A stretch of DNA of 55,322 bases, counting the filler, from Bipalium vagum (taxonomy: Eukaryota), in the NCBI GenBank assembly GCA_037834085.1. It is 2 parts of 2 records of this genome, joined end to end, with 100 filler letters (N's around TTAATTAATTAA, not from the genome) between each part and the next. Parts side by side here need not be neighbours in the genome. Positions count along the whole stretch, not along the records: positions 1 to 28,729 come from JBBMKC010046129.1; 1 more part is not named here. One strand, 5' to 3'. How positions within the stretch are numbered: the first letter of the stretch is position 1; every line of letters starts with the position of its first letter. The notes under the pieces are model-generated. The model searched no databases and was not told where the DNA came from. It saw only the letters and a list, made by a program, of their open reading frames with translations. Shown here in pieces: positions 1-25,818 of the stretch. The position numbers and the translations under genes are program-made.

Positions 1-904
1 CCTTTATTTTCAGGAACGATTAAGGAAAAAAGACCCAAACTGCCTAATTTCTTAACCTACACAATACTTGAGAATATCGAGACACACTACACTATTCATT
101 TTGTCAATCAATATATAAATTAAAGATAAGATTGTTATTTAAATTATCTTTATATAAGTATGATTACATAGACAATATATATAGTATTTCAATTTATAAA
201 ACTGTACTCTTTAAAGCATAAAATATGTAAAATTATTGATATTTATTACATACTCTGGAAAGTATGTAAGGATTTTCATAAACATTTCAATTGAAAAACA
301 TGAAAAATGCAAGTACTTACTACTAACTTGATAATTAAAATGAGGTTCTCAAAAGTTTTAAAGACACGTTAATACCTATAGAAAAACATCCTCCTAAATA
401 AATCAATTAATTCTTTAAAATATTTTTATTTCTCACAGAAAATTATATATATACTGGTGATGTAATATTAACTGACAATTTAACTAATCTTCAAAGAATT
501 GTATCTAATATTAATTAAAGTTTTCACTATTTTTATTATGTAAAACAGTTCATTTTTAAAACGACCTTATTAATATAATGAAAAAATGTGTATCTACTTA
601 ATTGAACTATAATAATATAATAATTTTATAAATGAAATAATAAATATCAATTGTTCATCGATTAATTCATTACCTCTTCCACTGGAAACAAGTGATTTTT
701 ATCAAAATGAGCAGCTTTGGGAATCAATTCCTTATCAGCAAAATCTCTACATGTTTTATAAAGTAGTTTGTGAGTATCTGGCCAATCTGACATGGTAAAA
801 CATCTTTTAATAATTGGCACTGAATTTTTGATGCAAAATTCTAAAAATTAAACTTAAACATATCTTTCACATGAAACAACTTAACTTATTAATCTTGAAT
901 TCAT
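1..904 (-). CDS. ACADS: Short-chain specific acyl-CoA dehydrogenase, mitochondrial (5' part; gene continues off the left edge)
   Basis: Not in the ORF track. Exons 904-886, 840-674 and 56-<1 have GT-AG introns of 45 and 617 nt in compatible phases. They give [62 protein letters not shown]|[19 protein letters not shown], which matches the recalled ACADS N-terminus ([46 protein letters not shown]). The N-terminal ~20 aa are basic and acid-free, like a mitochondrial presequence. The 19-nt first exon is the least certain part. Confidence 0.9.
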
Positions 905-1023
905 TTTATTTCATTAAAGCTAAGGTCAAAATTAGTTTAAAAATTACTTGAAAATGGTTCCGATAAACAAAGTTAAATAAAAAGTTAAAATATTAAATTA
1001 ACATTTTAAAAAAATAATCACCA

Positions 1024-1029
1024 TTTATT
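1024..1029 (-). promoter_or_regulatory. Probable polyadenylation signal (AATAAA) of the L3MBTL-like gene
   Basis: The only minus-strand AATAAA I found between the L3MBTL stop (1157) and the splice acceptor at 920. It lies about 128 nt after the stop and is followed by a T-rich tract. Confidence 0.55.
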
Positions 1030-1156
1030 AGGGAAAATAATGAAAATATCAAAGCTTAAAAATTATTATTTACAAATTCATAGACTATTTCCGATTCATT
1101 CAAAAAATTGAATATTATTATTTTTCGTAAAGATATAATCACAATGTAGAAGAATT

Positions 1157-4100
1157 TCAAGTGAAGTCAGATAATTTGCTTTCTGGAAATAGTTGTCTCA
1201 AATATTGAATGCTAGAGGAAAGTTTGATTGCTGGCCCTAATTTCATTCCCAGTACTTTCATCAAATCCATTTGCTTAAGACACATAAATGCAGCTCCATC
1301 GACTTCCTGAAATAAATTAAAGACCATCAGATTTTATTTTTCACATAGTTTAAAGCAAAAATTTTACATGTTCAATAAACCCATTTGTATATTGATCTGT
1401 TCCGATCAGTGATGATATAAGTTGAGATACTTCATGACAATTCCATTGCAAAATAGACTTTTTTATGTTCATCTTTCTAATGTGATCTGAAATATTTGAA
1501 TATTGATTCTTTTTGGATAAAGTCACTTTCGGTTTTCCTTTCGTTTTACAGTTTTTATTGCTCTGGATTTCTTGAATTATTTGAGTATTTTCATCTTTTA
1601 TGACTTTCAATGGCGGTAATATCTGTTCAACAATATTCCATTCCATTATTCGTCGATAATCATCACTTGGGTGATAGGGTGTTCGATTAGTATATGGTCT
1701 TAAAACTGATGAAGAAACAATTGCAACGGGATTTGGAATCAAGTTTTTCGGTGGATGATATTGGAAAAAAAATTTCTGGTCTTCTCTAAACAGATCAAAG
1801 TTTTCATCGTGATCTTTGATTTCTTGGAGTGAAAGAGATGGTGGAAAATCATACAATTTTGTGCGATTAAAATCACACGGAGAATTATTAAAAATTTGAG
1901 ACTCTTCAGATCTGAAATAAAAGTAAATGCCTGTTACATTAATAATATTGGTTTAAATAATACCGCGATAAAATTATTTAACATTTTTTTATAATGTCAA
2001 AAAATAAGATCTTTGTTATAATTATTTCGTTATTTATAAAATTTTTCTTTTTTTCTATATGAGGTGAATAATTTTAGTGTATCTTAATTTGATACTTTAA
2101 AAATAAGGTTTTAGTGAATTTTTGAGATTTTTCATTGTTCATCAATTGATAAGTTCATGTAATATTGATTGTCCTATAAAATTGCAAAATATTAAGATTT
2201 TAATTTTTAAAATTATTTTAATCTTTGAACATATTGTGCATAAGATGAAATGAGAGATATTTTTACTGAAAATATGAAAATTTAATTTTGTGAATGGTAT
2301 ATATTTAAGAAATGAAGAATTTTTTTGAAATAAATAATTTTTTGAAAAACCAAATATTTAATTTTATGATTAACTGATTATTGATATTTTCATTAATACT
2401 ATTTATAATAATGTTTGTTAAAAATGATTAAAATATTATTTTAATTATATTTGATATTATTACTATTTGATTATAATAAATATTTATTAAAAATTATTAT
2501 TATATCATTAAAAAGGATTTATATCAAGGTTCCATGTAATTTGTGAAATCGTTTTGAAAATAAATTTTAGATTAAATTAAGTAGTTTAAAACTTTTGAAA
2601 ATATATCGGTAGAGAAATTCTTAATGTCTCAATGTTTATGAACTTTGTAGAAGATTTTCCATTTAAAATAGAATTAAAAGTTTCGGAAAATTGTGTCAAT
2701 TGATTCATAACTTTCAAATATTAATTTGAAGTCCTTAAATTATTTTATTTATTTTTAAAACAAGAAAAAAAATACTTAATCCTAATGATAAATATTTGAT
2801 ATATTATTCTGAAATAGTAGAAAGAAAAGTTTCAAAATCTTTTGTTAGATAAAATTAATAAATTTAAAAAATAATCAATTAATAAAATAACTTTACCGAA
2901 ATATAAGGTGTTACAACAATACTGACGTTTTAATTTATTAATAAGAGATTATTTCTGAAAAGGCATCTGGTTATATTTTTAGATCATTTACGAACGTGAG
3001 TGTATCAAATTTGAAGTTTTTCTATTTATTCAGTCAAAATAGTTATATTAAAGTGAGAATTATCAAAAGAAAAATTATTTATACTGTTTCTTGCTTCAAA
3101 ATTGGAAAAGATCAATAGAGATTTTTTAAATTTTCTGTTGAAAATGGATTTTGATAAAATCTGATTCAAGGTAAAGTCAGTGATTGTGAAAGAACAATTT
3201 CGTCGTTCTAATTCATCCACAAGATAAAAGACTAATTTTGATAACATGATACAAGAATATGGTTCTTTTCGGGGTTCAGAATGGAACAATTTTCGTTGGT
3301 TTACTGGAAAAAAAATTTTTCACCAATAAAAGATTTATTGGAAACATTAATCAATTCTAATATAGTATAAAAATTTTAAAAAATAATTAAAAGGTCACAT
3401 AATTGCTATATATAATTGTAATACAGCGATCATTTCACGTTTTCATTAGTCCCTCTGGACACAGTTGATTCACAGTCAAGGTGTATCAGAGTTAGATAGC
3501 TTTGTCATAAATAAAGACCTCTACATGACCAAACATATAATTTTGATGATATAACCAAATTATTGTGAAGTTACTGATCACTTATTGGAAAAAATTCGAA
3601 GCAAGAGTAAATATTAATTATCGATTAATGTTAATCATTAATATTTAGTTATATTATTAAATCCAAAAAATAAATTACACAAGTGACAATTATAAATGAA
3701 AAGGCTCTAATTTTCAAAATGAAAGACAATCATAAATTAATCAAAATAATTTTTTTTAGACATTTCAGGGTTAAACGTATCATAGATTGATTAAAATTTC
3801 ATAACGTCGTCGATTATCATAACAGATCCACTTCTCATCACTCATTACGTTAGTGTAGGAAAATATTCTCGGTGATGACTTCATAGGTAGAATTACTTCT
3901 CAGTTCTGTCAATTCTTGTAGTTCCTAATCCTTTAGAATTTGATCTAAATTGCTATTTCTAGAAAGTTATTTCTCCAACCGTCATAAAATTCTTCTCCAC
4001 TGAATCTGCTTGACTTTTCTTTTTAAAGGAACATATCCAAATTGAATTGGATTTTCACCATCATTCATCTTCCAGATTTGTATTTTTATAGATTAATTTT

Positions 4101-7100
4101 TCGAAAAATCTCAAATTTTTGTGTTTTCCTATTTAAGATCGATATTACCACTGCTTCTTGATATCTGCATTATCTGTCTTGTCACTTCTGTAATATAAAC
4201 CTAGAATTGATTTTCACTTGTTTTGACAAAATTTTTAAAGTGGTTTCACAATCGAAAGATAAAAAAGTGGAACACAGGATTTAAAAATTTTTATAAGAAT
4301 GTAAGCTTAACTGATAAGAAATCGATCTCAACACAATGCAAACGGTCCTCAGTTTTATACCAATAGCAAAAATACAAATATTGTCATCATTAAATAAAGT
4401 AGAGTATAAGAAGAAAATTTGAAAAAAATCAAGTCTTACATTTCATTTTGCTCCATGGTTAAACTTGGAACAATGTCTATCGGAGCAGGAATTTTATATT
4501 CTTTCATTGAAAGATCCATCGGTTCAACATCATTTGTAGGAATTTCTATTTCCAACTGCTTCTGTACGGGAACAGTGGGCTCTAACTTTACGTTCTCGGT
4601 TGGCACTTCTTCAACTTTAGCAATATTATGCAAAATTCCGTCAACGTTATCAATGGACTGGATAACGGAGATTGGAATGCGGTCTGTCGATTTGAAGTCT
4701 TTATGCAAATTGCATTCAGCATACGGACAGCCCGATATCCTGTTTGCAACCATCTCATCGAAATTCACAAATCACAAAAAAAACCTTTGGTGATTCGAAT
4801 ATCTTGGCCCCTTAACGTGTCCGTATCCTTTGCAACCATAAATTGGGCACACACTCGATTCTATTGAAGCATCAACTGAAATGTTTTATTACGTCGATTA
4901 CTTTATTGACTTTATTTTATTGAAATAAGAATCAATTTTAATTGATTATTTTAAAACTTTTACGGGTAATTTTAAAAAGCTTAGTTATAATTTTAAATCT
5001 TTTTATGATCATTGTAAATAATTTATTGATATTTTTAAAGTATATTATCCTTTTATTTCGGCAATCATAAATACAGGAAAACAGCTTTAAATCGTAAAAA
5101 ATCCCCCAAAGCACTCCTAAGAAAAAAGTAATTGGAAGGACTTTTTTATGTACTTTACGAGCTGATAAGGACGTGATCCATCATAAACTGTTAAGATCTG
5201 ATCAAACGGTTAGATTGAATATGCTTGCAACAAAGAAATCAGTCTTAGCCAAGTATTATGGTAAAAATAGAGGTTATGTGTATCTTTTCTTTAGCGTTCG
5301 CCAAATGAGATTTCAATAACCGCAAATTATGATTTATTTATTTTTTCAAATTGAGATTATTCCCTTACCAATTTTGACTATATTAAATTGATCTATAAAT
5401 CAAAGTAATAAAGTAATTTAAATTATGAATTAATAAACTTAACTTTAAATTAAATTTAAAATAGAGAAAAGTAAAAAATATACGAGAATAACACTTACAA
5501 GTTGGAGGTGGTTGTAAAACGCATCCTGTCTTTGCACACCAGCCTACCGGAAGGATATTAACCCAAGAGCTTCCGAGATCAATTTTATAATTGTATTTTT
5601 CCGACCAATCATCGAAACCGATTGTAACTTGAAATTCTTCATTTAATTTGGCAATGTGACCCACTCTTATCAATTGGGGACATCTCTTATCAATGACTTC
5701 ACATCTCATCCCGACTTCAAGGTCGAACCACCACTGATTTCTCTGATTAACAAAAAATTTCAATTTTTATCACTATTATTTTTAAAAATTGATTTTTCTA
5801 AAATACAAATTAAATCAATAATTGAAAACTAAGATTGATTAAGATGATGGTTTTCCACTGAAAGAAAGGTGTACGCTCCTTTATAGTTCAGCAAAAGTCA
5901 ATTACTTCAAATTCAATACATTAATAAAAAAGGATTGTTGTAAAGAACCCTAAAAAATCAATTAACTTTGAGAAATTCTTGACAACCGCTAAGAAATTCG
6001 ATTAAAATAGTCAAATGTTGAAAAAAATGATATGTAATTCCAATAACAAAAGTCTATCAGAAAAGCTCATCACATCAGAATGACGGACTCTGTGCTGGTG
6101 CTAATGAACTGAAGAAAAAAACTGATATGATCTGATTATCGATTTAATGATTCATTTTGAAAATTTCAAAATGTCAACGAAGGATCGATTCCGATTGATC
6201 CGTTGAATAATGTTTATCAAAAATGAAAATTGAAATTCAAAGAGAACACGTAATGCTCTCAAAATCAAATAGAAAGTGTTATTAGAAACTAATCACACAA
6301 AACAATACATTTTTGATATTCAGTAAAAATTTAGACCCATTTTAGTGCGGGCTTCTTCCCTGTCATAATTGATATTTATTGATGTCGATTTTCTAAAAAT
6401 CTCTTTCAGACATTTTTTCATCAATTATGATACCTTATTTAATATCTAAACCTAGTTCAATTTATTTCCGTTACTACTCATTCTTCCGTAAAGGTAACTT
6501 TTTTCGAATGACAATCAATCTTGTCTTTTGAAACTGTAGTCACATTTTTATGACATCTTCGGAATCAAAACTTTAATGAGATATTATACCCTTATAGATG
6601 ACCGAAAAATGAAAATTAGACTTTGCCTTTAGCTGTTTTCGTTGCTGCATCAAATACAATGAAAAATTCCAATGAGAAATTGACATCATAGATTATGTTA
6701 TATTCGTAGAATGAGGTCATAATACATTAAAAGGGTGTAAGATAATCCGGTGACATTTTAAATGTTTTACCTTTATATATTGCTCTAAGTTTGAAACGTG
6801 AGTCACAACGATTATTTTTTATTGATTTTTTTTCAGGAAAAACCATTTAGATTTTGTTTTCGCTTTGATGATCCTGTCGCATGTTTTCAAAGTCTTAACA
6901 GTCTTCTTTAGGCTTCAACCAGTCATTACCAATTGGTCTTAGATTTGAAATTCCACCGATTTTATATTTTATAAGGTTTATCCAGTTAATTCCATTATAT
7001 AATGAAAAATATTGATACCTTCGATAAAATTATTTGCTTTAGAATATTTTGGTGAGACAGTAAAATTTAATAGAAGAATTTTAAAATTAAGTTTTAATAA

Positions 7101-10100
7101 TTAATATTGGTAGCACAATTTTAAGACTTTAAATCAAAAATTCTGATCAATATCCTGTAATGATTATTTTATAGCACATTTTCATTATAAGAAAAATTTA
7201 AATAAGATGGTGTAAATAATAATAATGGTTATATTTACAAGAGTTTTAATAATATTACCTCTTTGAAAATTGAATTAGGCACTGATTCAGAGTTTGTAAG
7301 TTGGAGATAACTTTCCCAGCTGAATGAGCTGAGATCGTGTCCATAGGCTAAAAAGTAAGTGAGAAAGAAAACATTTCTGCTGAATTTATTATTTAAATAA
7401 AATTACCTGAAGGGATTGATAAAACTTTCTCATTATCCTCACAATACCCAATAGGCAATAATAATGGTGAACAGCAATGGGCCCACATATCATATGAAGA
7501 ATCCCAGCCATCGAAATGTACCAAAACATGATCACCAATTATATCTTTTATCGTTGCCACACAAATCATTCCAGAATTTCTTTTATCTACAGCTTCTAAC
7601 TTTAAACCGATTTTAAAGGTATTTTTTGCAGACACCTTTATTAATTAATAGACAAAAAAATTATTACTTTTGTAAAATAAAAAAAACAAACTGCATTTTT
7701 AATAATAAAGAAAGAATCTTCATGTGCTGCTTCTGATTTGGTTTTTGCTAAATAAGTCGACCAGGCGAATGTAGAATAATTGTAATCTGAATATGAACAT
7801 GACAATGTCCTTTGGTTCTTATTTAATCCATGAATATATATTATTAACAATATTTCCACAAACATTTAAATATTTATTTTATTTTACTTGTTTTTGATTT
7901 AATTTTTTATTTTATAACTATTACAATTTTATTATTATTGTACTTTTTATTACTGTTAACATAACATTGTTATTAAATATTTTATTATTATTTATTAATA
8001 TATTATAATTTCTGATGATCCAAATATTTAATTATTAAATTTAATGTTCTTAAAATTTTTTCTTAATATTATCATTTTTATAATCATTAATATTATAATT
8101 ATTGTGCAATAATATAAAAGTAAGTTGTCAAGGATGATAAATTAAAAAATATAAATTTACGGCTATTATCATTAAATAATATAATCAAAACCGAAATAAT
8201 ATTAACCAAAACTTAATTGATATGTTAAATGAGATAATTAAAATTGATTCATTGATTTTTTTCTAACTTAAATCAAAAATATTAACAATGAAATATAATC
8301 TAAAAAAATTAAGGGAGTGATAATCTTATTAAAATGAAACAGATTTATTGTTAAAAGCAAAGTTTGGAAATACATTAAAGAAAATTTAAAATAAAATCGT
8401 TTATAAAAATTATCAGATTCCTTTATTCTTGGTACGGGGAAGGAAGGAAATCATTAATAACATTTTGAATGAGACTAATTGCTATCCTTCTTAACGATAA
8501 AGAAATTTTGTTATTTTTAATTAATTTGTAATAATAATAATAATAATAATTTTTTTAATTTTTATTTTGTTCTTAATCAGACTGCTGTGTCCTAAATTAA
8601 TTGAATGTTATTTTTATAATATCATTCAATAATTAGATAGAGAAATAAATCTGATAAATTGAAAAAATAATGATTATAATTAAGAAATAGAGTATTAGAT
8701 TATGAAACTGAAAAATAACACTATAAAACAATTAAATCGATCAGTTTATTTTTCTGATTATAATTTATAAGTAGATTGATCTCTGATAAATTTTACTCAA
8801 TGAGATCGATTTACCTTTCGGTGGTTGGAGTTTTCGATTGTTTTTTTCACACCAACCAGCAGGGAAAATTAATTGCGAATCTGCCATTGTCCAAAAATCG
8901 AACTGATCCTGGTATCCATCGAAATGAAGCCGTAAACGATATCCGGAAATTTCAACGATCGTAAAAACGCAAAAAAGACTCTCATTGTTTGGATCAATAC
9001 CCTCAAGTTTTTGATTCACTTTGAAATTATGTTTTAATTCACTTTCCATCTGGGAAAAGAAAGAAAGCAGTGTAAGAATTATTTTATGATCAATAACAAC
9101 CAATAGTAAAACTGAAAAACAATTTAAAATTAATGATAAGTATCGATTAGTTTCCAAAGGTTTTTATTTCATCGACTGCGATTTCTAAGGAAAATAATTA
9201 ATTTTCTGAATATCCAACAAAATAAATAATGGATCTTTATTTTATTTCCAAAAAATTTTATATCGACTTTAAAATATTTATTCTTTTTCTACCATTATCT
9301 GTCTAAATTTCAAAATGTTCTTACAACGCTTTTTCTGGATGTACCAACTTGATTTCTGATTCTTTTTGGGAAGGCATTAAATATTATCAATGACATATTG
9401 TACGTAGAGTTCATCGGTAATGGAAAAAATTTGATTTCTTTTAAGGTTACACTTACAAAAACCAAAATTTTCGATATTTTCCAATTGAAAAATTAATATA
9501 TCTGATTCATATACCTATTTAATTGATTAATACTAAATTAAAATTTTTAAAACATTGAAAATCGTGATGAGAAAAATGTATCATGTGTAATAGCAAAAAA
9601 ACCTTTGGTATTAAAGTATTTTATGTATAAATAAAGAAGAAAAATATTCTGGAAGTTAAAAATACTATATTTATTGAAAAAAAATAATTACGATAAAAGT
9701 AAAAAATAAGAATATAAAAGATTAAAAATTAAAATTAAGAAATCATTAAATTTTTTCAAAGAAAATTACCTTTTACTTTATTATTTTAAAAATTGTGATC
9801 TAATCTTAAATAGAAAAATAAAGATCAATAACAATATGAAAATCATTGTAAATTTCAAAGCTAGAAAAATATATATACACATAAATTTCAATTTTAATGA
9901 ATTTTTTTTATTATTTTTATATTTGACTAACAAATTTTGCAGCCCTGAGCTAAATTAATTTTCTTTATTATTTACCACTAGTTTTGGTCATTATTCTTAA
10001 TGTAATTACAACAATTTATTTAATTGGCCACTTTAATTTGTTTTAAAATGTATTTCCATTTTAATTATTTATCATCACCGTTCTTGGTGTAATATCCGTA

Positions 10101-13100
10101 TTGTTTAAATGAAAAAATTAATTAATATTCAAAAACATTTTCATGTCATTAAAATGGTGAAAGAATTTCTCATAACGTTATTGATTTGATTAAATTTGAA
10201 TAAGATTTCGTTTCTTTTTAAAAACAATTCTTCTTTCTTCCATGCGACCATAACTCGAAGACCAATATTCACTTCGGTTGTCTTAACAATTTTTTATTTA
10301 TTTATTTTTATTAAGCGAAAAGTTTTATTCTTTAAAAAAATTTTAATTCAGAAAATGACAACGAAACAGATTTTTTTATAACTACAAATTAAAATCGATT
10401 TCTTTAAAAATTTCCATCATAACATTTATTTAATAAATATATCGAAATGACAACAACCTATGAATAAATCATTAAAATAAAAACGTCTTTATACTTTTTA
10501 TCGCAAACCAAAAACTCAATCACTCAACTCATTTATTTAATGATTCAATAATTAATAATCAATAGTGACCGTGTTAAAACAAACAATTTTGAAATTGTAT
10601 TGATTAATTTTTTTATTTTATCCTTAACGAGAATATAATTCAATGGTTAATTACTCGTTCAATTGATATTTCATGTCACAAAAATCAATAGTGAGTTTCC
10701 AAATCAATATTTTTACAATATTTGTATCGATTTGACTAGCGGAGCATAGAAATAACGAGATTCAAACTTACATCAGTGCCACAGAATCGTATCCCAATAT
10801 TATCGAATAGCTTCGTGGGAACACTCTTTCCATTGATCGATTTCAGATATTCTGTCCAATCAAAATTCGTCGTTTTCGATTCTGGAGAAAAAATTATTAT
10901 AAAAATACATCATTTTTATCTTCACATTTATTTTGATTTATCAATTTTAAAAATGATCATCTCTGCCGTTCTGTCATTTGTTTGTGGAAGTCATCACTGA
11001 ATTTATATATCAGAACAATTGTGACTGTTTCAATTTATTAGAAATTTTATAGGAAAACAGTCAGAAATATTTTATTTATTTGATAATGAAATTTTGTATT
11101 AGAAACCAATCAATAATTTTATGACCTCTAATCATAAGATGAAGAACAAAAAACGGGGCGAGAAGTTTATCTTTCACAAATTGATTGATAATCACAATCA
11201 AGAAGTAATTCAAAAAATGGAAATTATTGATTTTATCAATATATTACAATATACAATCAATCGATTGTGTAATCGGAATCAGTGACATATTGAACAATGA
11301 TTTTGATCATTTTAGATTTCATTTCGGATTTTACTGTTCTTTTCTCAACAAAGCTCTTTTTGTTTCTAAATTAATGAAAAGCATCAGTCTACATTTATCA
11401 CTGTGTTTGCATATTTAAATTTTATTGTGTACTGCACAAATAAAGTCTGAAAAATCCATCTCACCATAAATAGCTCAGACTTTTGGACAAATCTTATTTC
11501 GAATAATGAAAATTTCGATCAGTGTTCAAAATGCATTTAATGTGTGGAAGATCTTTTATTATTTGATAATAAAATTATTCTTTTATTTTTCAAATGAAAA
11601 TAAATTTAGAACGTTCCAAAATTCTATCTTAAACATGAACGACATTATAGAGTAATAAAAATAGAAATGATCATTCTGAAAATGAGAATAAGAATAATTA
11701 AAAAATAAAAAGTTGATACTAAAATAATAATCATAATAATTATATCGTAAGAATTATTGATTTTTAAAAAATAATTCTGCTTCTTATCGTTTTTTATTTT
11801 CTATAAAGAAATGGAAAAAAAATACATTTGAAGAAATACATTTGAAAATACAATGAACACGTTTAACACTCGTTAGATCTAACTTTATCTAATTCCAATA
11901 AGACTGTGTCAAATGGAGATGTATAGAATAAAAATTAGCCTTAAAAGACATTCCTTTTGTAAAGCTAATGAAAGAAAGTTATTGCAGAACAATTTTGATA
12001 TAACTCTTGTCTAATTCCATATCAATTACGGTATTAATATTTTATTCATTTGTAATTCCTGAATTAAATACATTGTTTCAATTGTGTAATTTTCAAAATA
12101 AAATTATTAATTAATTAATTGTCATAACAGATTAATTATACTTTATATATTTTATTTTGAAATTATTAATTATTAATAGATATTTAATCTCAATACAAAA
12201 ACATTATCACAAATATAATAAGTGGTGATAAATGAAATATTTTAATTATAAAATTGTGATAATATTTTTTATAAAAATAAAAACATTTTTAAAAATATTA
12301 ATTTATTGTGAAAATCAATCACTTTTAAGTTTTGTAAAAATAAAAACGATGTTACATATTTTCCTTACATGGTCTAATCCATTATCATTTTTTCATAAAT
12401 CTATATAAGCTATAGTCCAATAATAAACTTCAACCTAATTCAAAAATCTGTTTATTAATGATTAAATGAATTTAATTGATACTCAGAAAACTGGGACAAA
12501 ATTTCTTCAATTTAATAAAAGGTCTCTGTTATATGAGAGATTAAGAGAAATATATTCAAAATGATTAATTTAATGTAATATTGATCGAAAAAACAGTTTA
12601 TGGAAATCACGGAACATACATTACACTTAATTGATTGCTCTAAATAAATTAAATAAGTTTTTCAGGAAGACATCAAAAATAAGTCGAAATTATTATACGT
12701 TTTAATCAATATATTTTGAATTAAATATTAAAAAACGAATTGTCTCAAACATTTTTATCGAGTAGATTTTTATATTCCATCCACAACTCCAAAAAACCTC
12801 ACACTCTCTCCTCATCCACTTAAGGATTCAATTTCTCTTGACCACAAAACATTTCTTTACATCTCCCAAAAAAGAATCAAAATATAATTATCAAATACCA
12901 ATGTGGCTATTGTCGCTCACATCACAATCAACAAAAATAAGCTATGATCATCAATGTCAATTTTTCCATATTATTACCCAAAAGAGCACTGAAATGTGAC
13001 TCAGATTTTATTGAAAATGATAAAGAAAGAAATCGTACAAGAAGGTAATAAATATTTCTAATAATGAGAATATCTGCTTCTTCTTTGGTATTGTCGAATA

Positions 13101-23699: not shown

Positions 23700-24250
23700 A
23701 AGTAATTTTTGGTGGGAGAAATGGTTACCTTTGAAAAACATTGAATTAGGATAAAGATATTTATTTAAATTACATGCACCTTATAAACCGATAATTTTTG
23801 TGAAGACTCATTATTGGAAAAATTTGATTTTTGGCCTAAAATTTTACATTCTTGTATAGAATTGAACTTTATCTTGTTGAGAGACCTATAGTGAGATCTA
23901 AATAAATGGTAATCTGACATTGCCAGATCCGTTACTTCCCATCCAAACTCGTTCAATTTTTTCAATTGTTCAAAGATGAGAGTGGTCTGGCATTGCTGAA
24001 CCAGACCACATTTATCTCATTTATCAATTTTTGACTGGTTTTTTAATCTTCTTAATTGATCACAATGCAAATCAGAAAAAACCGTTTATTATACAACCAG
24101 AATTCATAAGAAATAATTCCTTTCCAATCCAACCATACACAACATTATTTTGTTTGATATCAATTCATGTTATAGGTAACCATTTTTCGTAGTCCCCTTT
24201 TGGTTTAGAAATGGTTTACTCTTATTTTATAGTAGTAACTCAGATTAAAC
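23700..24250 (-). mobile_element. Degenerate mariner transposase, C-terminal half
   Basis: ORF 23765-23965 contains KLNEFGWEV...DLAMSDYHLFRS (YSPDLAPSDYHLF region). A frameshifted MLC..WLDWKGIISYE lies at about 24100-24150. Confidence 0.7.
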
Positions 24251-24856: not shown

Positions 24857-25818
24857 TAGTAACAATTTCAATTCCTTCTAATTGGTTAATTTTATTTGAG
24901 TTACTGGCCCAGTATGTGGACGAGCATTATCCTGTTGCAGAAGTATCCGCTTTCTGTTGACTAAAACAGGATATTTTATGGCTAATTGTTGGCAAATCCG
25001 ATCGAGCTGAATAAATTATAACTCAGCAGTAATGGTTTGGCCATCTGGAAGTACTTCGAAGTTTATAATCCCCTCAGTTCCATCACTCGCACAATATGAT
25101 CTTTTTTCCGAACCTATCTGGTTTTGGAACAGCCTTGGGCTTCTGACCTAGTTCTAGCCATTGATTTCTTCTGTTTGCATTTCAATAATATATCCATTTT
25201 TCGTCGCACGTGACTATGAGACGTATAAAGCGTTCATCATTTGAATTATTTAATAATTGACGACAGATCGACAAACGGTGTTCAGCTTGACTTGGCGTCA
25301 AATCATGCGGTACTTCAGAAACGCGCTTGTATCGCTTGTTACGTTGATGTAGATGACTAACCACAGATGGTTGTGATGTTCCGGTCTCAGCCGACAATCT
25401 ACGTGTACTATTTGATGGATTCATTTCTACGGCTTTGAGAATAGCTTCTGACGCTACAGTTGTGGAACGTCCACTGAGAGGATAATTATTGAGGTTTATA
25501 TCACCCTTGTTGAATTTTTTGAACCACTTTTGAGCAGTTCTTATGGACACTGATTTGTCGCCTTCAACTTCACATCTTTTCTTTACCATATTTATGGGTC
25601 TGAAATTATGCTTCCGGTAATGTTTCAGAAATATACGGATTGCTAATTTATCCATTCTTTTTTACTGAATAAATATATATATATACAAACTACATATAAC
25701 TTAATATAATTAAAAGTGTCCCTTTCTCAGCTTTCAAATGGTGTGCGAATAATATATGTAAAATTTACTTTTAAAGTTTATATAGGAAAAACACACGAAC
25801 TTATAAATCAACCCAATA
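24857..25818 (-). mobile_element. Mariner element: 5' TIR plus transposase pseudogene, 3'-truncated
   Basis: TIR ta-ttgggttgatttataagttcgtgtgtttttc (minus strand from 25818). ORF 25182-25655 has a mariner HTH (SIRTAQKWFKKF...SGR), EVPHDL (WVPHEL) and IVTCDEKWIYY, then a premature stop. It continues, broken, to LLQQDNARPHT (about 24915-24945) and ends before YSPDL. Confidence 0.9.

What the first reader, a model, noticed from the sequence alone, without database searches (positions are those of the whole stretch)
886..1306. Candidate L3MBTL-ACADS operon resolved by spliced-leader trans-splicing
Seen: the L3MBTL stop (1157) and the ACADS ATG (904) are on the same strand and only 252 nt apart, whereas other genes here are 1-9 kb apart and interrupted by TEs. 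In transcription order the spacer holds AATAAA (1029-1024), a U-rich tract (about 1018-963), then a branch-point/acceptor aaCTAATtttgacctTAG ending at 920, 15 nt before the ATG. The AATAAA-to-AG distance is 104 nt. The nearest good donor (gtaatt, 947) would give only a 28-nt intron, shorter than any here (minimum 45). Established: nematode operons have about 100 nt with a U-rich element between the upstream 3' end and the trans-splice site, and flatworms use SL trans-splicing. Inference: a methyl-lysine-reading chromatin repressor and a mitochondrial butyryl-CoA to crotonyl-CoA enzyme may be co-transcribed. That would link a chromatin reader with short-chain acyl-CoA metabolism, but the functional link is speculative.
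Basis: partly seen in the sequence, partly recalled or inferred. Interest (0 to 1): 0.78.

Follow-up and report, generated by a model that had tools for sequence, protein, structure and literature searches.

The report
Candidate two-gene operon in a planarian
In a planarian genome, a chromatin-reader gene ends only about 100 bases before a fat-burning enzyme gene starts, which fits a flatworm operon, but no RNA data could be reached to show that the two are made as one transcript.

Summary
On the minus strand, a 3xMBT+SAM gene stops at 1159-1157. A short-chain acyl-CoA dehydrogenase (ACADS) gene starts at ATG 904-902, 252 nt later. The AATAAA (1029-1024), the T-rich tract and the only YAG acceptor (922-920) are all where stated.

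I could add four things:
- The genome is a triclad planarian. It carries canonical spliced-leader (SL) RNA genes, so the machinery exists.
- The AATAAA sits in a small conserved island in a related species, so the upstream gene really ends about 100 nt before the ACADS ATG. This matches the flatworm operon spacing reported for Schistosoma mansoni (median 99 bp).
- A second, 84%-identical version of the ACADS 5' region exists in the same genome. It abuts a high-copy repeat instead of the MBT gene. It has lost AG 920 and the AATAAA, and its spacer diverges as fast as an intron.
- No RNA run holds this locus, so SL addition, a dicistronic precursor and a spacer promoter all remain untested.

Verdict: a legitimate but unproven operon candidate of a known kind, about 40% likely. 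The named acceptor is not supported by conservation, and the proposed chromatin-metabolism link has no evidence. Interest is modest.

The parts
5386..10909 (-). MBT-repeat exons of the upstream gene. The three MBT cores lie at about 8768-9163, 7396-7644 and 5386-5766.
   Evidence: Pfam MBT matches with E 1.1e-29, 6e-26 and 1.6e-15. Open frames are listed.
1368..1911 (-). Penultimate exon of the MBT/SAM gene. Its acceptor AG is at 1913-1912 and its donor GT at 1367-1366.
   Evidence: Read. It has a 72%-identical orthologous open frame in a related species (P0001 on L001).
1157..1306 (-). Last exon of the MBT/SAM gene (SAM domain), with stop TGA at 1159-1157.
   Evidence: Pfam SAM_1 E 3.7e-4. 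The exon is 79% identical to L001, and the stop is at the same codon position.
1005..1156 (-). Inferred 3' UTR of the MBT/SAM gene. The cleavage site was not mapped; the 1005 end is an estimate.
   Evidence: It lies between the stop codon and the conserved AATAAA. It is about 66% identical to the relative.
1024..1029 (-). AATAAA poly(A) signal of the upstream gene.
   Evidence: In L001 (related species) the hexamer is identical and the roughly 34 nt around it nearly so, while the flanks are 60-66% identical. In the second in-genome copy, which has no MBT gene beside it, the hexamer is broken by a 5-nt insertion.
963..1018 (-). T-rich tract downstream of the poly(A) signal.
   Evidence: 62.5% T, in the top 0.7% of 56-nt windows on this strand. 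The GTGATTATTT just after the AATAAA is conserved in L001. Sixteen nt of the tract are deleted in copy 2.
920..922 (-). TAG, the only YAG acceptor candidate between the poly(A) signal and the ATG.
   Evidence: It is not conserved in copy 2, where TTAG has become TTTA.
947..950 (-). CAAG, an alternative and weaker acceptor. The A at position -3 is disfavoured.
   Evidence: It is the only other AG downstream of the AATAAA, and it is kept in copy 2.
906..914 (-). Upstream mini-ORF ATG AAA TAA in the would-be 5' UTR.
   Evidence: After splicing at 920 the SL's own terminal ATG would also read ATG CTT TAA. That gives two 2-codon upstream ORFs before the main ATG (inference).
886..904 (-). ACADS exon 1, which holds the start codon and the first part of a basic mitochondrial presequence.
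   Evidence: Joining it to exon 2 gives [22 protein letters not shown]... with no acidic residues. It is identical in copy 2.
841..885 (-). ACADS intron 1, 45 nt.
   Evidence: GT..AG boundaries, phase 1. It is 44/44 identical plus one indel in copy 2.
674..840 (-). ACADS exon 2.
   Evidence: Pfam Acyl-CoA_dh_N E 8.6e-5. The two copies differ at 9 codons here, 4 synonymous and 5 nonsynonymous.
1..56 (-). Start of ACADS exon 3, cut by the contig end. It continues on G000:C251894 (locus L007), which overlaps the window start by 77 nt.
   Evidence: Exon 3 matches human and rat SCAD best, E 6e-48.

Best explanation
The locus is a tight head-to-tail pair in a triclad planarian genome. An L3MBTL-like gene (3 MBT repeats plus SAM) ends at a conserved poly(A) signal. 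Its mRNA 3' end probably falls near 1010-1000. About 100 nt further on, the ACADS (short-chain acyl-CoA dehydrogenase) coding sequence begins.

The most likely mechanism is a two-gene operon of the flatworm/nematode type with an intercistronic region. RNA polymerase II would start at the MBT gene's promoter and read through both genes. The upstream mRNA would be cleaved and polyadenylated after the AATAAA. The downstream ACADS mRNA would be capped by trans-splicing of the planarian spliced leader onto an acceptor just upstream of the ATG. TAG 922-920 is the best candidate acceptor in this copy, and CAAG 950-947 is the fallback.

Shown here: the gene identities and geometry, the SL RNA genes in the genome, and the conserved poly(A) signal.

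Inferred, not shown: co-transcription, SL addition, the acceptor used, and the absence of a promoter in the spacer.

The pairing is probably a matter of shared housekeeping or germline-type transcription, not a functional chromatin-metabolism circuit.
For: 1. Geometry. Both genes lie on the same strand, with 252 nt from stop to ATG and 104 nt from AATAAA to AG. This meets the at-most-300-bp criterion for flatworm operon candidates. It also sits at the median intercistronic distance reported for S. mansoni operons (99 bp; PMC12582326). M. lignano operons peak at about 100 bp (PMC8629364).

2. SL machinery. The genome encodes SL RNA genes at two loci. Each has a leader ending ...TTTTATATG, a GTATGA donor, an AATTTTTGA Sm site and a three-stem fold with z = -3.4. 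SL trans-splicing is documented in Schmidtea (PMC10899757).

3. Real 3' end. The AATAAA and its flanks are a conserved island in the orthologous contig of a related species. That leaves very little room for an independent promoter.

4. Spacer content. The T-rich tract is in the top 0.7% of windows on this strand, and a single YAG acceptor lies 15 nt before the ATG.

5. Assembly. The junction is not an assembly chimera. Contigs of run X1 cover 879-1061 and 1032-4000 without differences. The relative's contig is colinear across 1094.
Against: - No RNA evidence of any kind is available.
- AG 920 is absent from the second, 84%-identical version of the region (L005). That version keeps exon 1, intron 1 and an open exon 2.
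- The spacer as a whole diverges between the two copies at the intron rate: 84.4% against 84.0%. So no spacer element shows constraint in that comparison.
- Copy 2 abuts a high-copy repeat rather than the MBT gene. If copy 2 is expressed, the roughly 190 nt it shares upstream of the ATG may hold a promoter.
- Splicing at 920 would put two mini upstream ORFs before the ACADS ATG.
- The acceptor and the AATAAA are individually common by chance, at 19% and 37%.
- The papers I could read say the prevalence of operons in free-living flatworms other than Macrostomum has not been estimated (PMC8629364).
Confidence: 0.4

Rival explanations
1. Two independent genes. ACADS has its own compact promoter and transcription start inside the 3' UTR or spacer of the MBT gene (within about 190 nt of the ATG). 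Its mRNA is conventionally capped, with no spliced leader.
For: A second version of the ACADS 5' region shares only about 190 nt upstream of the ATG and then runs into a repeat. It still keeps intact splice sites and an open frame, and its exons are less diverged than its introns (9/170 against 72/449 mismatches). If that copy is expressed, the shared 190 nt would suffice as a promoter. AG 920 is dispensable in that copy.
Against: The spacer is no better conserved than intron 2 between the copies, so there is no sign of a constrained promoter either. A promoter within about 100 nt of an active poly(A) site would face transcriptional interference, and this arrangement is unusual in a large, gene-sparse genome (inference). 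It is not shown that copy 2 is functional. Its identity pattern is a mosaic (64/64 in exon 1 plus intron 1, then 7 differences in 52 nt), which also fits gene conversion.
Confidence: 0.3
2. ACADS is SL trans-spliced but is not part of an operon. It would be transcribed from its own start site somewhere upstream, inside or beyond the MBT gene's last exons. The leader would then replace that outron.
For: [quoted passage not shown] The SL machinery is present. An acceptor-like TAG lies 15 nt before the ATG.
Against: It needs a promoter embedded in the upstream gene, for which there is no evidence. The acceptor is not conserved in copy 2.
Confidence: 0.12
3. AG 920 is a cis-splice acceptor. ACADS would have a non-coding first exon further upstream, with its donor at 1021 (gtgatt, 102-nt intron) or inside the MBT gene. 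Alternatively, read-through chimeric MBT-ACADS transcripts are cis-spliced.
For: The donor-like GTGATT at 1021-1016 exists, and the GTGATTATTT there is conserved in the relative. Flatworm SL acceptors are widely shared with cis-splicing (PMC12582326).
Against: That conserved GTGATTATTT sits right after the AATAAA, where a GU/U-rich downstream poly(A) element is expected. This explains its conservation better. AG 920 is lost in copy 2.
Confidence: 0.08
4. The adjacency has no mechanistic meaning. It could be a recent rearrangement or duplication break, or an assembly mis-join at a duplicated segment, and this ACADS copy may not be the expressed one.
For: The ACADS 5' region exists in two versions. 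The assembly is a fragmented graph with 77-nt contig overlaps and forks at ACADS exon 3.
Against: The related species' contig is colinear from the SAM exon through 53 nt past the AATAAA, which crosses the duplication boundary at 1094. Contigs of run X1 tile 879-1061 and 1032-4000 with no differences. The frame and splice sites of copy 1 are intact.
Confidence: 0.05

Closest known systems
Flatworm SL-resolved operons with an intercistronic region (S. mansoni, cestodes, Macrostomum lignano; PMC12582326, PMC8629364)
   Same: Two genes on the same strand, less than 300 bp apart, with about 100 nt between the upstream 3'-end signal and the acceptor. Most flatworm operons have two genes. The host has an SL RNA whose leader ends in ATG.
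   Different: No SL-bearing read, no precursor and no annotation support are available here. The host is a triclad, and none of the papers I could read estimates how common operons are in that group. The candidate acceptor is not conserved in the paralogous or allelic copy.
C. elegans SL2-type operons (Blumenthal; as summarised in PMC12582326)
   Same: About 100-nt intercistronic region, an AAUAAA followed by a U-rich stretch, then a trans-splice acceptor close to the ATG. The partner genes are functionally unrelated housekeeping-type genes.
   Different: I did not find a specialised SL2-like leader here; both SL RNA genes found carry the same leader. Parasitic flatworms show no SL specialisation (PMC12582326). 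The U-rich element is not shown to function, and part of it is deleted in copy 2.
UbCRBP (UQCRB)-enolase polycistron of trematodes (Op8 in PMC12582326)
   Same: It is the classic flatworm example of a mitochondrial-protein gene paired in an operon with a metabolic enzyme gene.
   Different: That pair is not adjacent in this genome. UQCRB is a single-exon gene with no enolase within 640 nt downstream, and the enolase hits lie on other contigs. It therefore gives no in-genome precedent for operons.

Membership tests
SL trans-splicing-resolved operon (flatworm/nematode type) | Adjacent genes on the same strand, separated by at most 300 bp | tested here: met
   252 nt from stop to ATG; 104 nt from AATAAA to AG. 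The criterion is from PMC12582326.
SL trans-splicing-resolved operon (flatworm/nematode type) | The host genome encodes an SL RNA (leader, splice donor, Sm site) | tested here: met
   There are two loci, G000:C77960 and C31059. Each has the leader, a GTATGA donor, an AATTTTTGA Sm site and a three-stem fold with z = -3.4.
SL trans-splicing-resolved operon (flatworm/nematode type) | The upstream gene's 3'-end formation signal lies inside the spacer | tested here: met
   AATAAA 1029-1024 is conserved, together with its flanks, in the related species' contig L001.
SL trans-splicing-resolved operon (flatworm/nematode type) | The downstream mRNA carries the SL at an acceptor upstream of its ATG | not testable with these tools
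   No RNA run holds the locus. Only one DNA-like run, X1, was found.
SL trans-splicing-resolved operon (flatworm/nematode type) | A polycistronic precursor exists and there is no promoter between the genes | not testable with these tools
   This needs nascent or long-read RNA and chromatin marks. None was available.
SL trans-splicing-resolved operon (flatworm/nematode type) | The acceptor is conserved in other copies or relatives | tested here: not met
   TTAG has become TTTA in copy 2 (L005). The relative's contig ends 53 nt after the AATAAA, before the site.
SL trans-splicing-resolved operon (flatworm/nematode type) | The gene pair is conserved in related species | tested here: inconclusive
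   L001 stops before any ACADS sequence. The closest ACADS exon-3 relative, P0002, has no DNA on hand. L018 is a distant, 44% GC organism with no MBT or SAM gene within 1.5 kb upstream.
L3MBTL-type MBT protein | Three MBT repeats | tested here: met
   Pfam MBT E 1.1e-29, 6e-26 and 1.6e-15 in three exons.
L3MBTL-type MBT protein | C-terminal SAM domain | tested here: inconclusive
   SAM_1 scores 21.2 bits, E 3.7e-4, just under Pfam's 23-bit cut-off. The nearest Atlas clusters for the adjoining penultimate exon (1353-1856) are SAM-domain proteins such as polyhomeotic-like and Scm-like, at scores of 0.79-0.84, which count only as leads.
L3MBTL-type MBT protein | Zinc finger between the MBT repeats and the SAM domain | tested here: not met
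   The exon at 4439-4771 has no Pfam match at E up to 0.01. So 'L3MBTL-like' is an architecture label, not a proven orthology.
ACADS / short-chain acyl-CoA dehydrogenase | Closest to characterised SCAD rather than to other ACAD classes | tested here: met
   Exon 3 (L007) hits human and rat SCAD at E about 6e-48. The next class scores 3e-27. There are 12 ACAD N-domain hits elsewhere in the genome.
ACADS / short-chain acyl-CoA dehydrogenase | N-terminal mitochondrial presequence | tested here: inconclusive
   The first 22 residues are basic with no acidic residue. No targeting predictor was run.

The most novel reading that the evidence does not exclude
The pair is a true, selectively maintained operon. 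It would couple a histone methyl-lysine reader to the enzyme that turns butyryl-CoA into crotonyl-CoA, so that chromatin repression and the supply of short-chain acyl donors for histone acylation are co-regulated in planarian cells. It would also be one of the first operons defined in a triclad, with a nematode-like intercistronic layout of about 100 nt that is U-rich.
Probability: 0.04. Interest if true: 0.75.

Novelty: new member of a known kind. Interest (0 to 1): 0.3.

Why it matters
If confirmed, this would be a concrete operon with mapped signals in a triclad planarian. Spliced-leader trans-splicing is known in that group, but the papers I could read say operon prevalence in free-living flatworms other than Macrostomum has not been estimated. 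It would also extend the roughly 100-nt intercistronic architecture seen in schistosomes, Macrostomum and nematodes. It would help fix chimeric or missed gene models in planarian annotations. As it stands, it is one plausible candidate among what may be hundreds, with no evidence of a functional tie between the two genes.

Tried and rejected
- **RNA evidence.** The one sequencing-run search returned a single DNA-like run and no RNA. Laying its contigs confirmed the assembly and showed the second haplotype or paralogue, nothing more.
- **Rfam SL families.** The nematode SL1 and SL2 models found nothing in the genome. No Rfam family matched the planarian SL loci.
- **Relatives through proteins.** The MBT-gene exon found one related genomic contig, which ends before the ACADS gene. 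ACADS exon 2 found nothing. ACADS exon 3 found P0002, a probable planarian relative with no DNA on hand. It also found P0003/L018, a distant 44% GC organism with nothing MBT-like upstream. Other hits were non-planarian.
- **Full-length ACADS transcripts.** These could not be reached. Exon-sized queries fall outside the length window of the word search, and a joined spliced model was deliberately not built or searched.
- **Supplement of PMC12582326.** It has no ACAD or MBT entry, and its operon lists give only orthogroup numbers.
- **UQCRB-enolase operon as an in-genome precedent.** The two genes are not adjacent here.
- **Homology upstream of 1094 between the two copies.** It is not significant; 94 of 500 shuffles score as well.
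- **Rossi et al. 2014 (SL3 paper).** It is not held in the library.
Full report
**Observation**

- The last exon of the upstream gene is 1306-1157, with stop TGA at 1159-1157.
- The spacer is 1156-905, which is 252 nt.
- AATAAA lies at 1029-1024.
- A tract of 62.5% T covers 1018-963.
- CTAAT lies at 935-931, and TAG at 922-920.
- The ACADS ATG is at 904-902.
- ACADS exon 1 is 904-886, followed by a 45-nt intron (885-841). Exon 2 is 840-674. Exon 3 starts at 56 and runs off the contig.

The upstream gene has three MBT repeats (Pfam E 1e-15 to 1e-29). It also has a weak C-terminal SAM match (E 3.7e-4; leads to SAM-domain clusters for the adjoining penultimate exon). No zinc-finger match was found, so 'L3MBTL-like' describes the architecture only.

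The downstream gene matches Acyl-CoA_dh_N. Its exon 3 lies on the adjoining contig C251894, which overlaps the window start by 77 nt. That exon matches human and rat short-chain acyl-CoA dehydrogenase at E about 6e-48, far ahead of other ACAD classes.

I searched the spliced gene models exon by exon only.

**Is it more than chance?**

In this 25% GC DNA the individual signals are common.
- An acceptor-like YAG lies 5-40 nt upstream of 19% of random positions.
- An AATAAA lies 60-200 nt upstream of 37% of random positions.

The unusual features are the tight spacing, the T-rich tract (top 0.7% of windows) and the scarcity of AG in the spacer. Only four AG dinucleotides occur there. Only two lie downstream of the AATAAA: CAAG at 950-947 and TAG at 922-920.

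**What organism, and does it trans-splice?**

The genome (G000) has 440.8 Mb in 272,664 contigs. The nematode SL1 and SL2 models found nothing.

I then used a 23-base stretch of the planarian spliced leader, recalled from memory, purely as a lead. It hit the genome twice without mismatch; the reversed control pattern gave no hits.

Both loci are complete SL RNA genes. Each has:
- a leader ending ...AAATTTTATATG;
- a GTATGA donor;
- an AATTTTTGA Sm site;
- a terminal hairpin.

The 105-nt RNA folds into the expected three stems, with z = -3.4.

So the host is a triclad planarian with the trans-splicing machinery. This agrees with published work on Schmidtea (PMC10899757).

**The upstream gene's 3' end**

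The word search with the penultimate MBT-gene exon found one relative, P0001. It lies on a 1,159-nt genomic contig from another species (L001).

That contig carries the two orthologous exons, with the intron and the stop codon in the same places. It also holds 190 nt of 3' flank. Identity to the window is as follows:

| Region | Identity |
|---|---|
| Last intron | about 60% |
| 3' UTR | about 66% |
| SAM exon | 79% |

Against that background, about 34 nt around CCCTAATAAA...GTGATTATTT are nearly identical. I take this to be the real poly(A) signal with its downstream GU/U-rich element.

The MBT gene's mRNA therefore probably ends near 1010-1000, about 100 nt before the ACADS ATG. The relative's contig stops 53 nt after the AATAAA. 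It cannot show whether ACADS follows there too.

**Fit to known operons**

The flatworm literature I could read defines operon candidates as same-strand pairs at most 300 bp apart. It reports a median of 99 bp between the upstream 3' UTR end and the SL acceptor in S. mansoni (PMC12582326). It reports a peak near 100 bp in Macrostomum lignano (PMC8629364).

This locus fits that description. The Macrostomum paper also notes that, among free-living flatworms studied earlier, there was no firm estimate of how many genes lie in operons.

**A second copy as a natural comparison**

The genome holds a second version of the ACADS 5' region, contig C240856 (L005). It aligns with window 1094-197 at 84% identity.

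- *What lies upstream of it.* Upstream of the point that matches 1094, L005 consists of a high-copy foldback repeat. The repeat has at least 40 scored copies, many of them at contig ends. It has no significant likeness to the MBT gene's end.
- *The MBT gene is single-copy.* Its last exons occur only once in the assembly.
- *Allele or paralogue.* Contig depths in run X1 are similar for the MBT contig (23.7), the copy-1 pieces (22.6 and 30.3) and the copy-2 pieces (21.8 to 35.1). This favours a paralogue, or a hemizygous arrangement, over a collapsed allele. I could not settle it. The assembly graph also forks at exon 3 in a way that fits alleles equally well.
- *Either way, copy 2 is not preceded by the MBT exons.*

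Identity between the two copies, by block:

| Block | Identity |
|---|---|
| Exon 1 plus intron 1 | 63/63 aligned bases, plus one indel |
| Exon 2 | 161/170 (9 codons differ, 4 synonymous and 5 nonsynonymous, mostly in the presequence) |
| Spacer | 146/173 = 84.4%, with four indels |
| Intron 2 | 84.0% |

So the spacer is no better conserved than an intron. Within it:
- TTAG at the proposed acceptor has become TTTA;
- the AATAAA is split by a 5-nt insertion;
- 16 nt of the T-rich tract are deleted;
- CAAG at 950-947 is kept.

Loss of the AATAAA in a copy that no longer follows the MBT gene fits its role as that gene's poly(A) signal.

Loss of AG 920 can be read two ways. Either the site is not needed, or copy 2 is no longer trans-spliced there. 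If copy 2 is expressed, the roughly 190 nt it shares with copy 1 may hold a promoter. That is the strongest point for the rival explanation.

The mosaic pattern of identity could also reflect gene conversion. I therefore do not treat copy 2 as proven functional.

**A further small point against site 920**

The planarian leader ends in ATG. Joined at 919, it would read ATG CTT TAA. A second mini-ORF (ATG AAA TAA, 914-906) follows before the ACADS ATG. Short upstream ORFs like these are tolerable but not ideal.

**What could not be done**

- No RNA run holds the locus. The only holder is a DNA-like run. Its contigs confirm the assembly across the spacer: pieces cover 879-1061 and 1032-4000 with no differences.
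- Attempts to reach planarian ACADS transcripts through protein look-ups failed.
- The UQCRB-enolase pair, a classic flatworm operon, is not adjacent here. It gives no in-genome precedent.
- The supplement of PMC12582326 names neither gene.

**Verdict**

My estimates are:

| Explanation | Probability |
|---|---|
| Two-gene operon resolved by SL trans-splicing | about 0.40 |
| Independent compact promoter in the spacer | about 0.30 |
| SL trans-splicing of a separately initiated transcript | about 0.12 |
| Cis-spliced 5' exon | about 0.08 |
| Artefact or meaningless adjacency | about 0.05 |
| Unassigned | the remainder |

If trans-splicing does occur in this copy, TAG 922-920 is the likeliest site, but conservation does not support it.

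Nothing supports the proposed functional coupling of a methyl-lysine reader with butyryl/crotonyl-CoA metabolism. Operon partners in nematodes and flatworms are usually unrelated.

This would be a new member of a known kind. It is of modest interest until an SL-tagged ACADS cDNA or a dicistronic read is shown.

Noticed in passing
G000:C77960:1673-1777 (+) = L003:1498-1602; G000:C31059 around 3630-3652 (-) = L002: There are two spliced-leader RNA genes of the planarian type. Each has a leader ending AAATTTTATATG, a GTATGA donor, an AATTTTTGA Sm site and three stems. The leaders are identical, but the upstream flanks and the 3' hairpin loops differ. No Rfam family matches them.
   Followed up: partly
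G000:C240856 (L005:134-1017) against window 1094-197: This is a second, 84%-identical version of the ACADS 5' region (spacer, exon 1, intron 1, exon 2, most of intron 2). It has an extra insertion of about 330 nt in intron 2 and rejoins the shared exon 3-4 contig through C37373. Whether it is an allele or a paralogue is unresolved. Depths in run X1 are about 1:1:1 with the single-copy MBT gene.
   Followed up: partly
L005:1-133 and at least 40 other places in G000 (for example C88243:12353-12492, C7990:839-958): A high-copy repeat (511 first-look candidates) with internal inverted-repeat structure, probably MITE-like. It is often found at contig ends and directly abuts the second ACADS copy at the point matching window 1094.
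   Followed up: partly
window 904-841 against L005:308-371: Exon 1 plus the 45-nt intron 1 are identical between the two copies (63/63 aligned bases plus one indel), while the flanks are 84% identical. Residues 27-60 of exon 2 also show no change. This looks like a gene-conversion tract or a constraint on the tiny intron, and it is not explained.
   Followed up: no
window 25185-25661 (-), and 23768-24016 (-): A Mos1/mariner-type transposase remnant. The N-terminal HTH_48 domain scores E 4e-7. A downstream frame holds a DYHLF-like motif typical of mariner transposases but has no Pfam match.
   Followed up: partly
window 1-77; G000:C251894 both ends; C37373; C264524; C19098: Contig ends overlap by exactly 77 nt and fork in pairs. 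The assembly is therefore an unresolved k=77 graph with many two-way branches, which probably inflates the contig count and splits genes such as ACADS over several contigs.
   Followed up: partly
G000:C65543:6199-6567 (L037:1438-1806): UQCRB (cytochrome b-c1 subunit 7) is a single-exon gene here. A TAG lies 8 nt before its ATG, and no enolase follows within 640 nt. The trematode UQCRB-enolase operon is not kept as an adjacency in this planarian.
   Followed up: partly
window 4439-4771 (-): A 111-residue open exon-like frame between the third MBT repeat and the penultimate exon. It begins with a Cys/His-containing stretch (CPYAECNLH) but has no Pfam match. It may be a divergent zinc finger of the MBT gene.
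   Followed up: no
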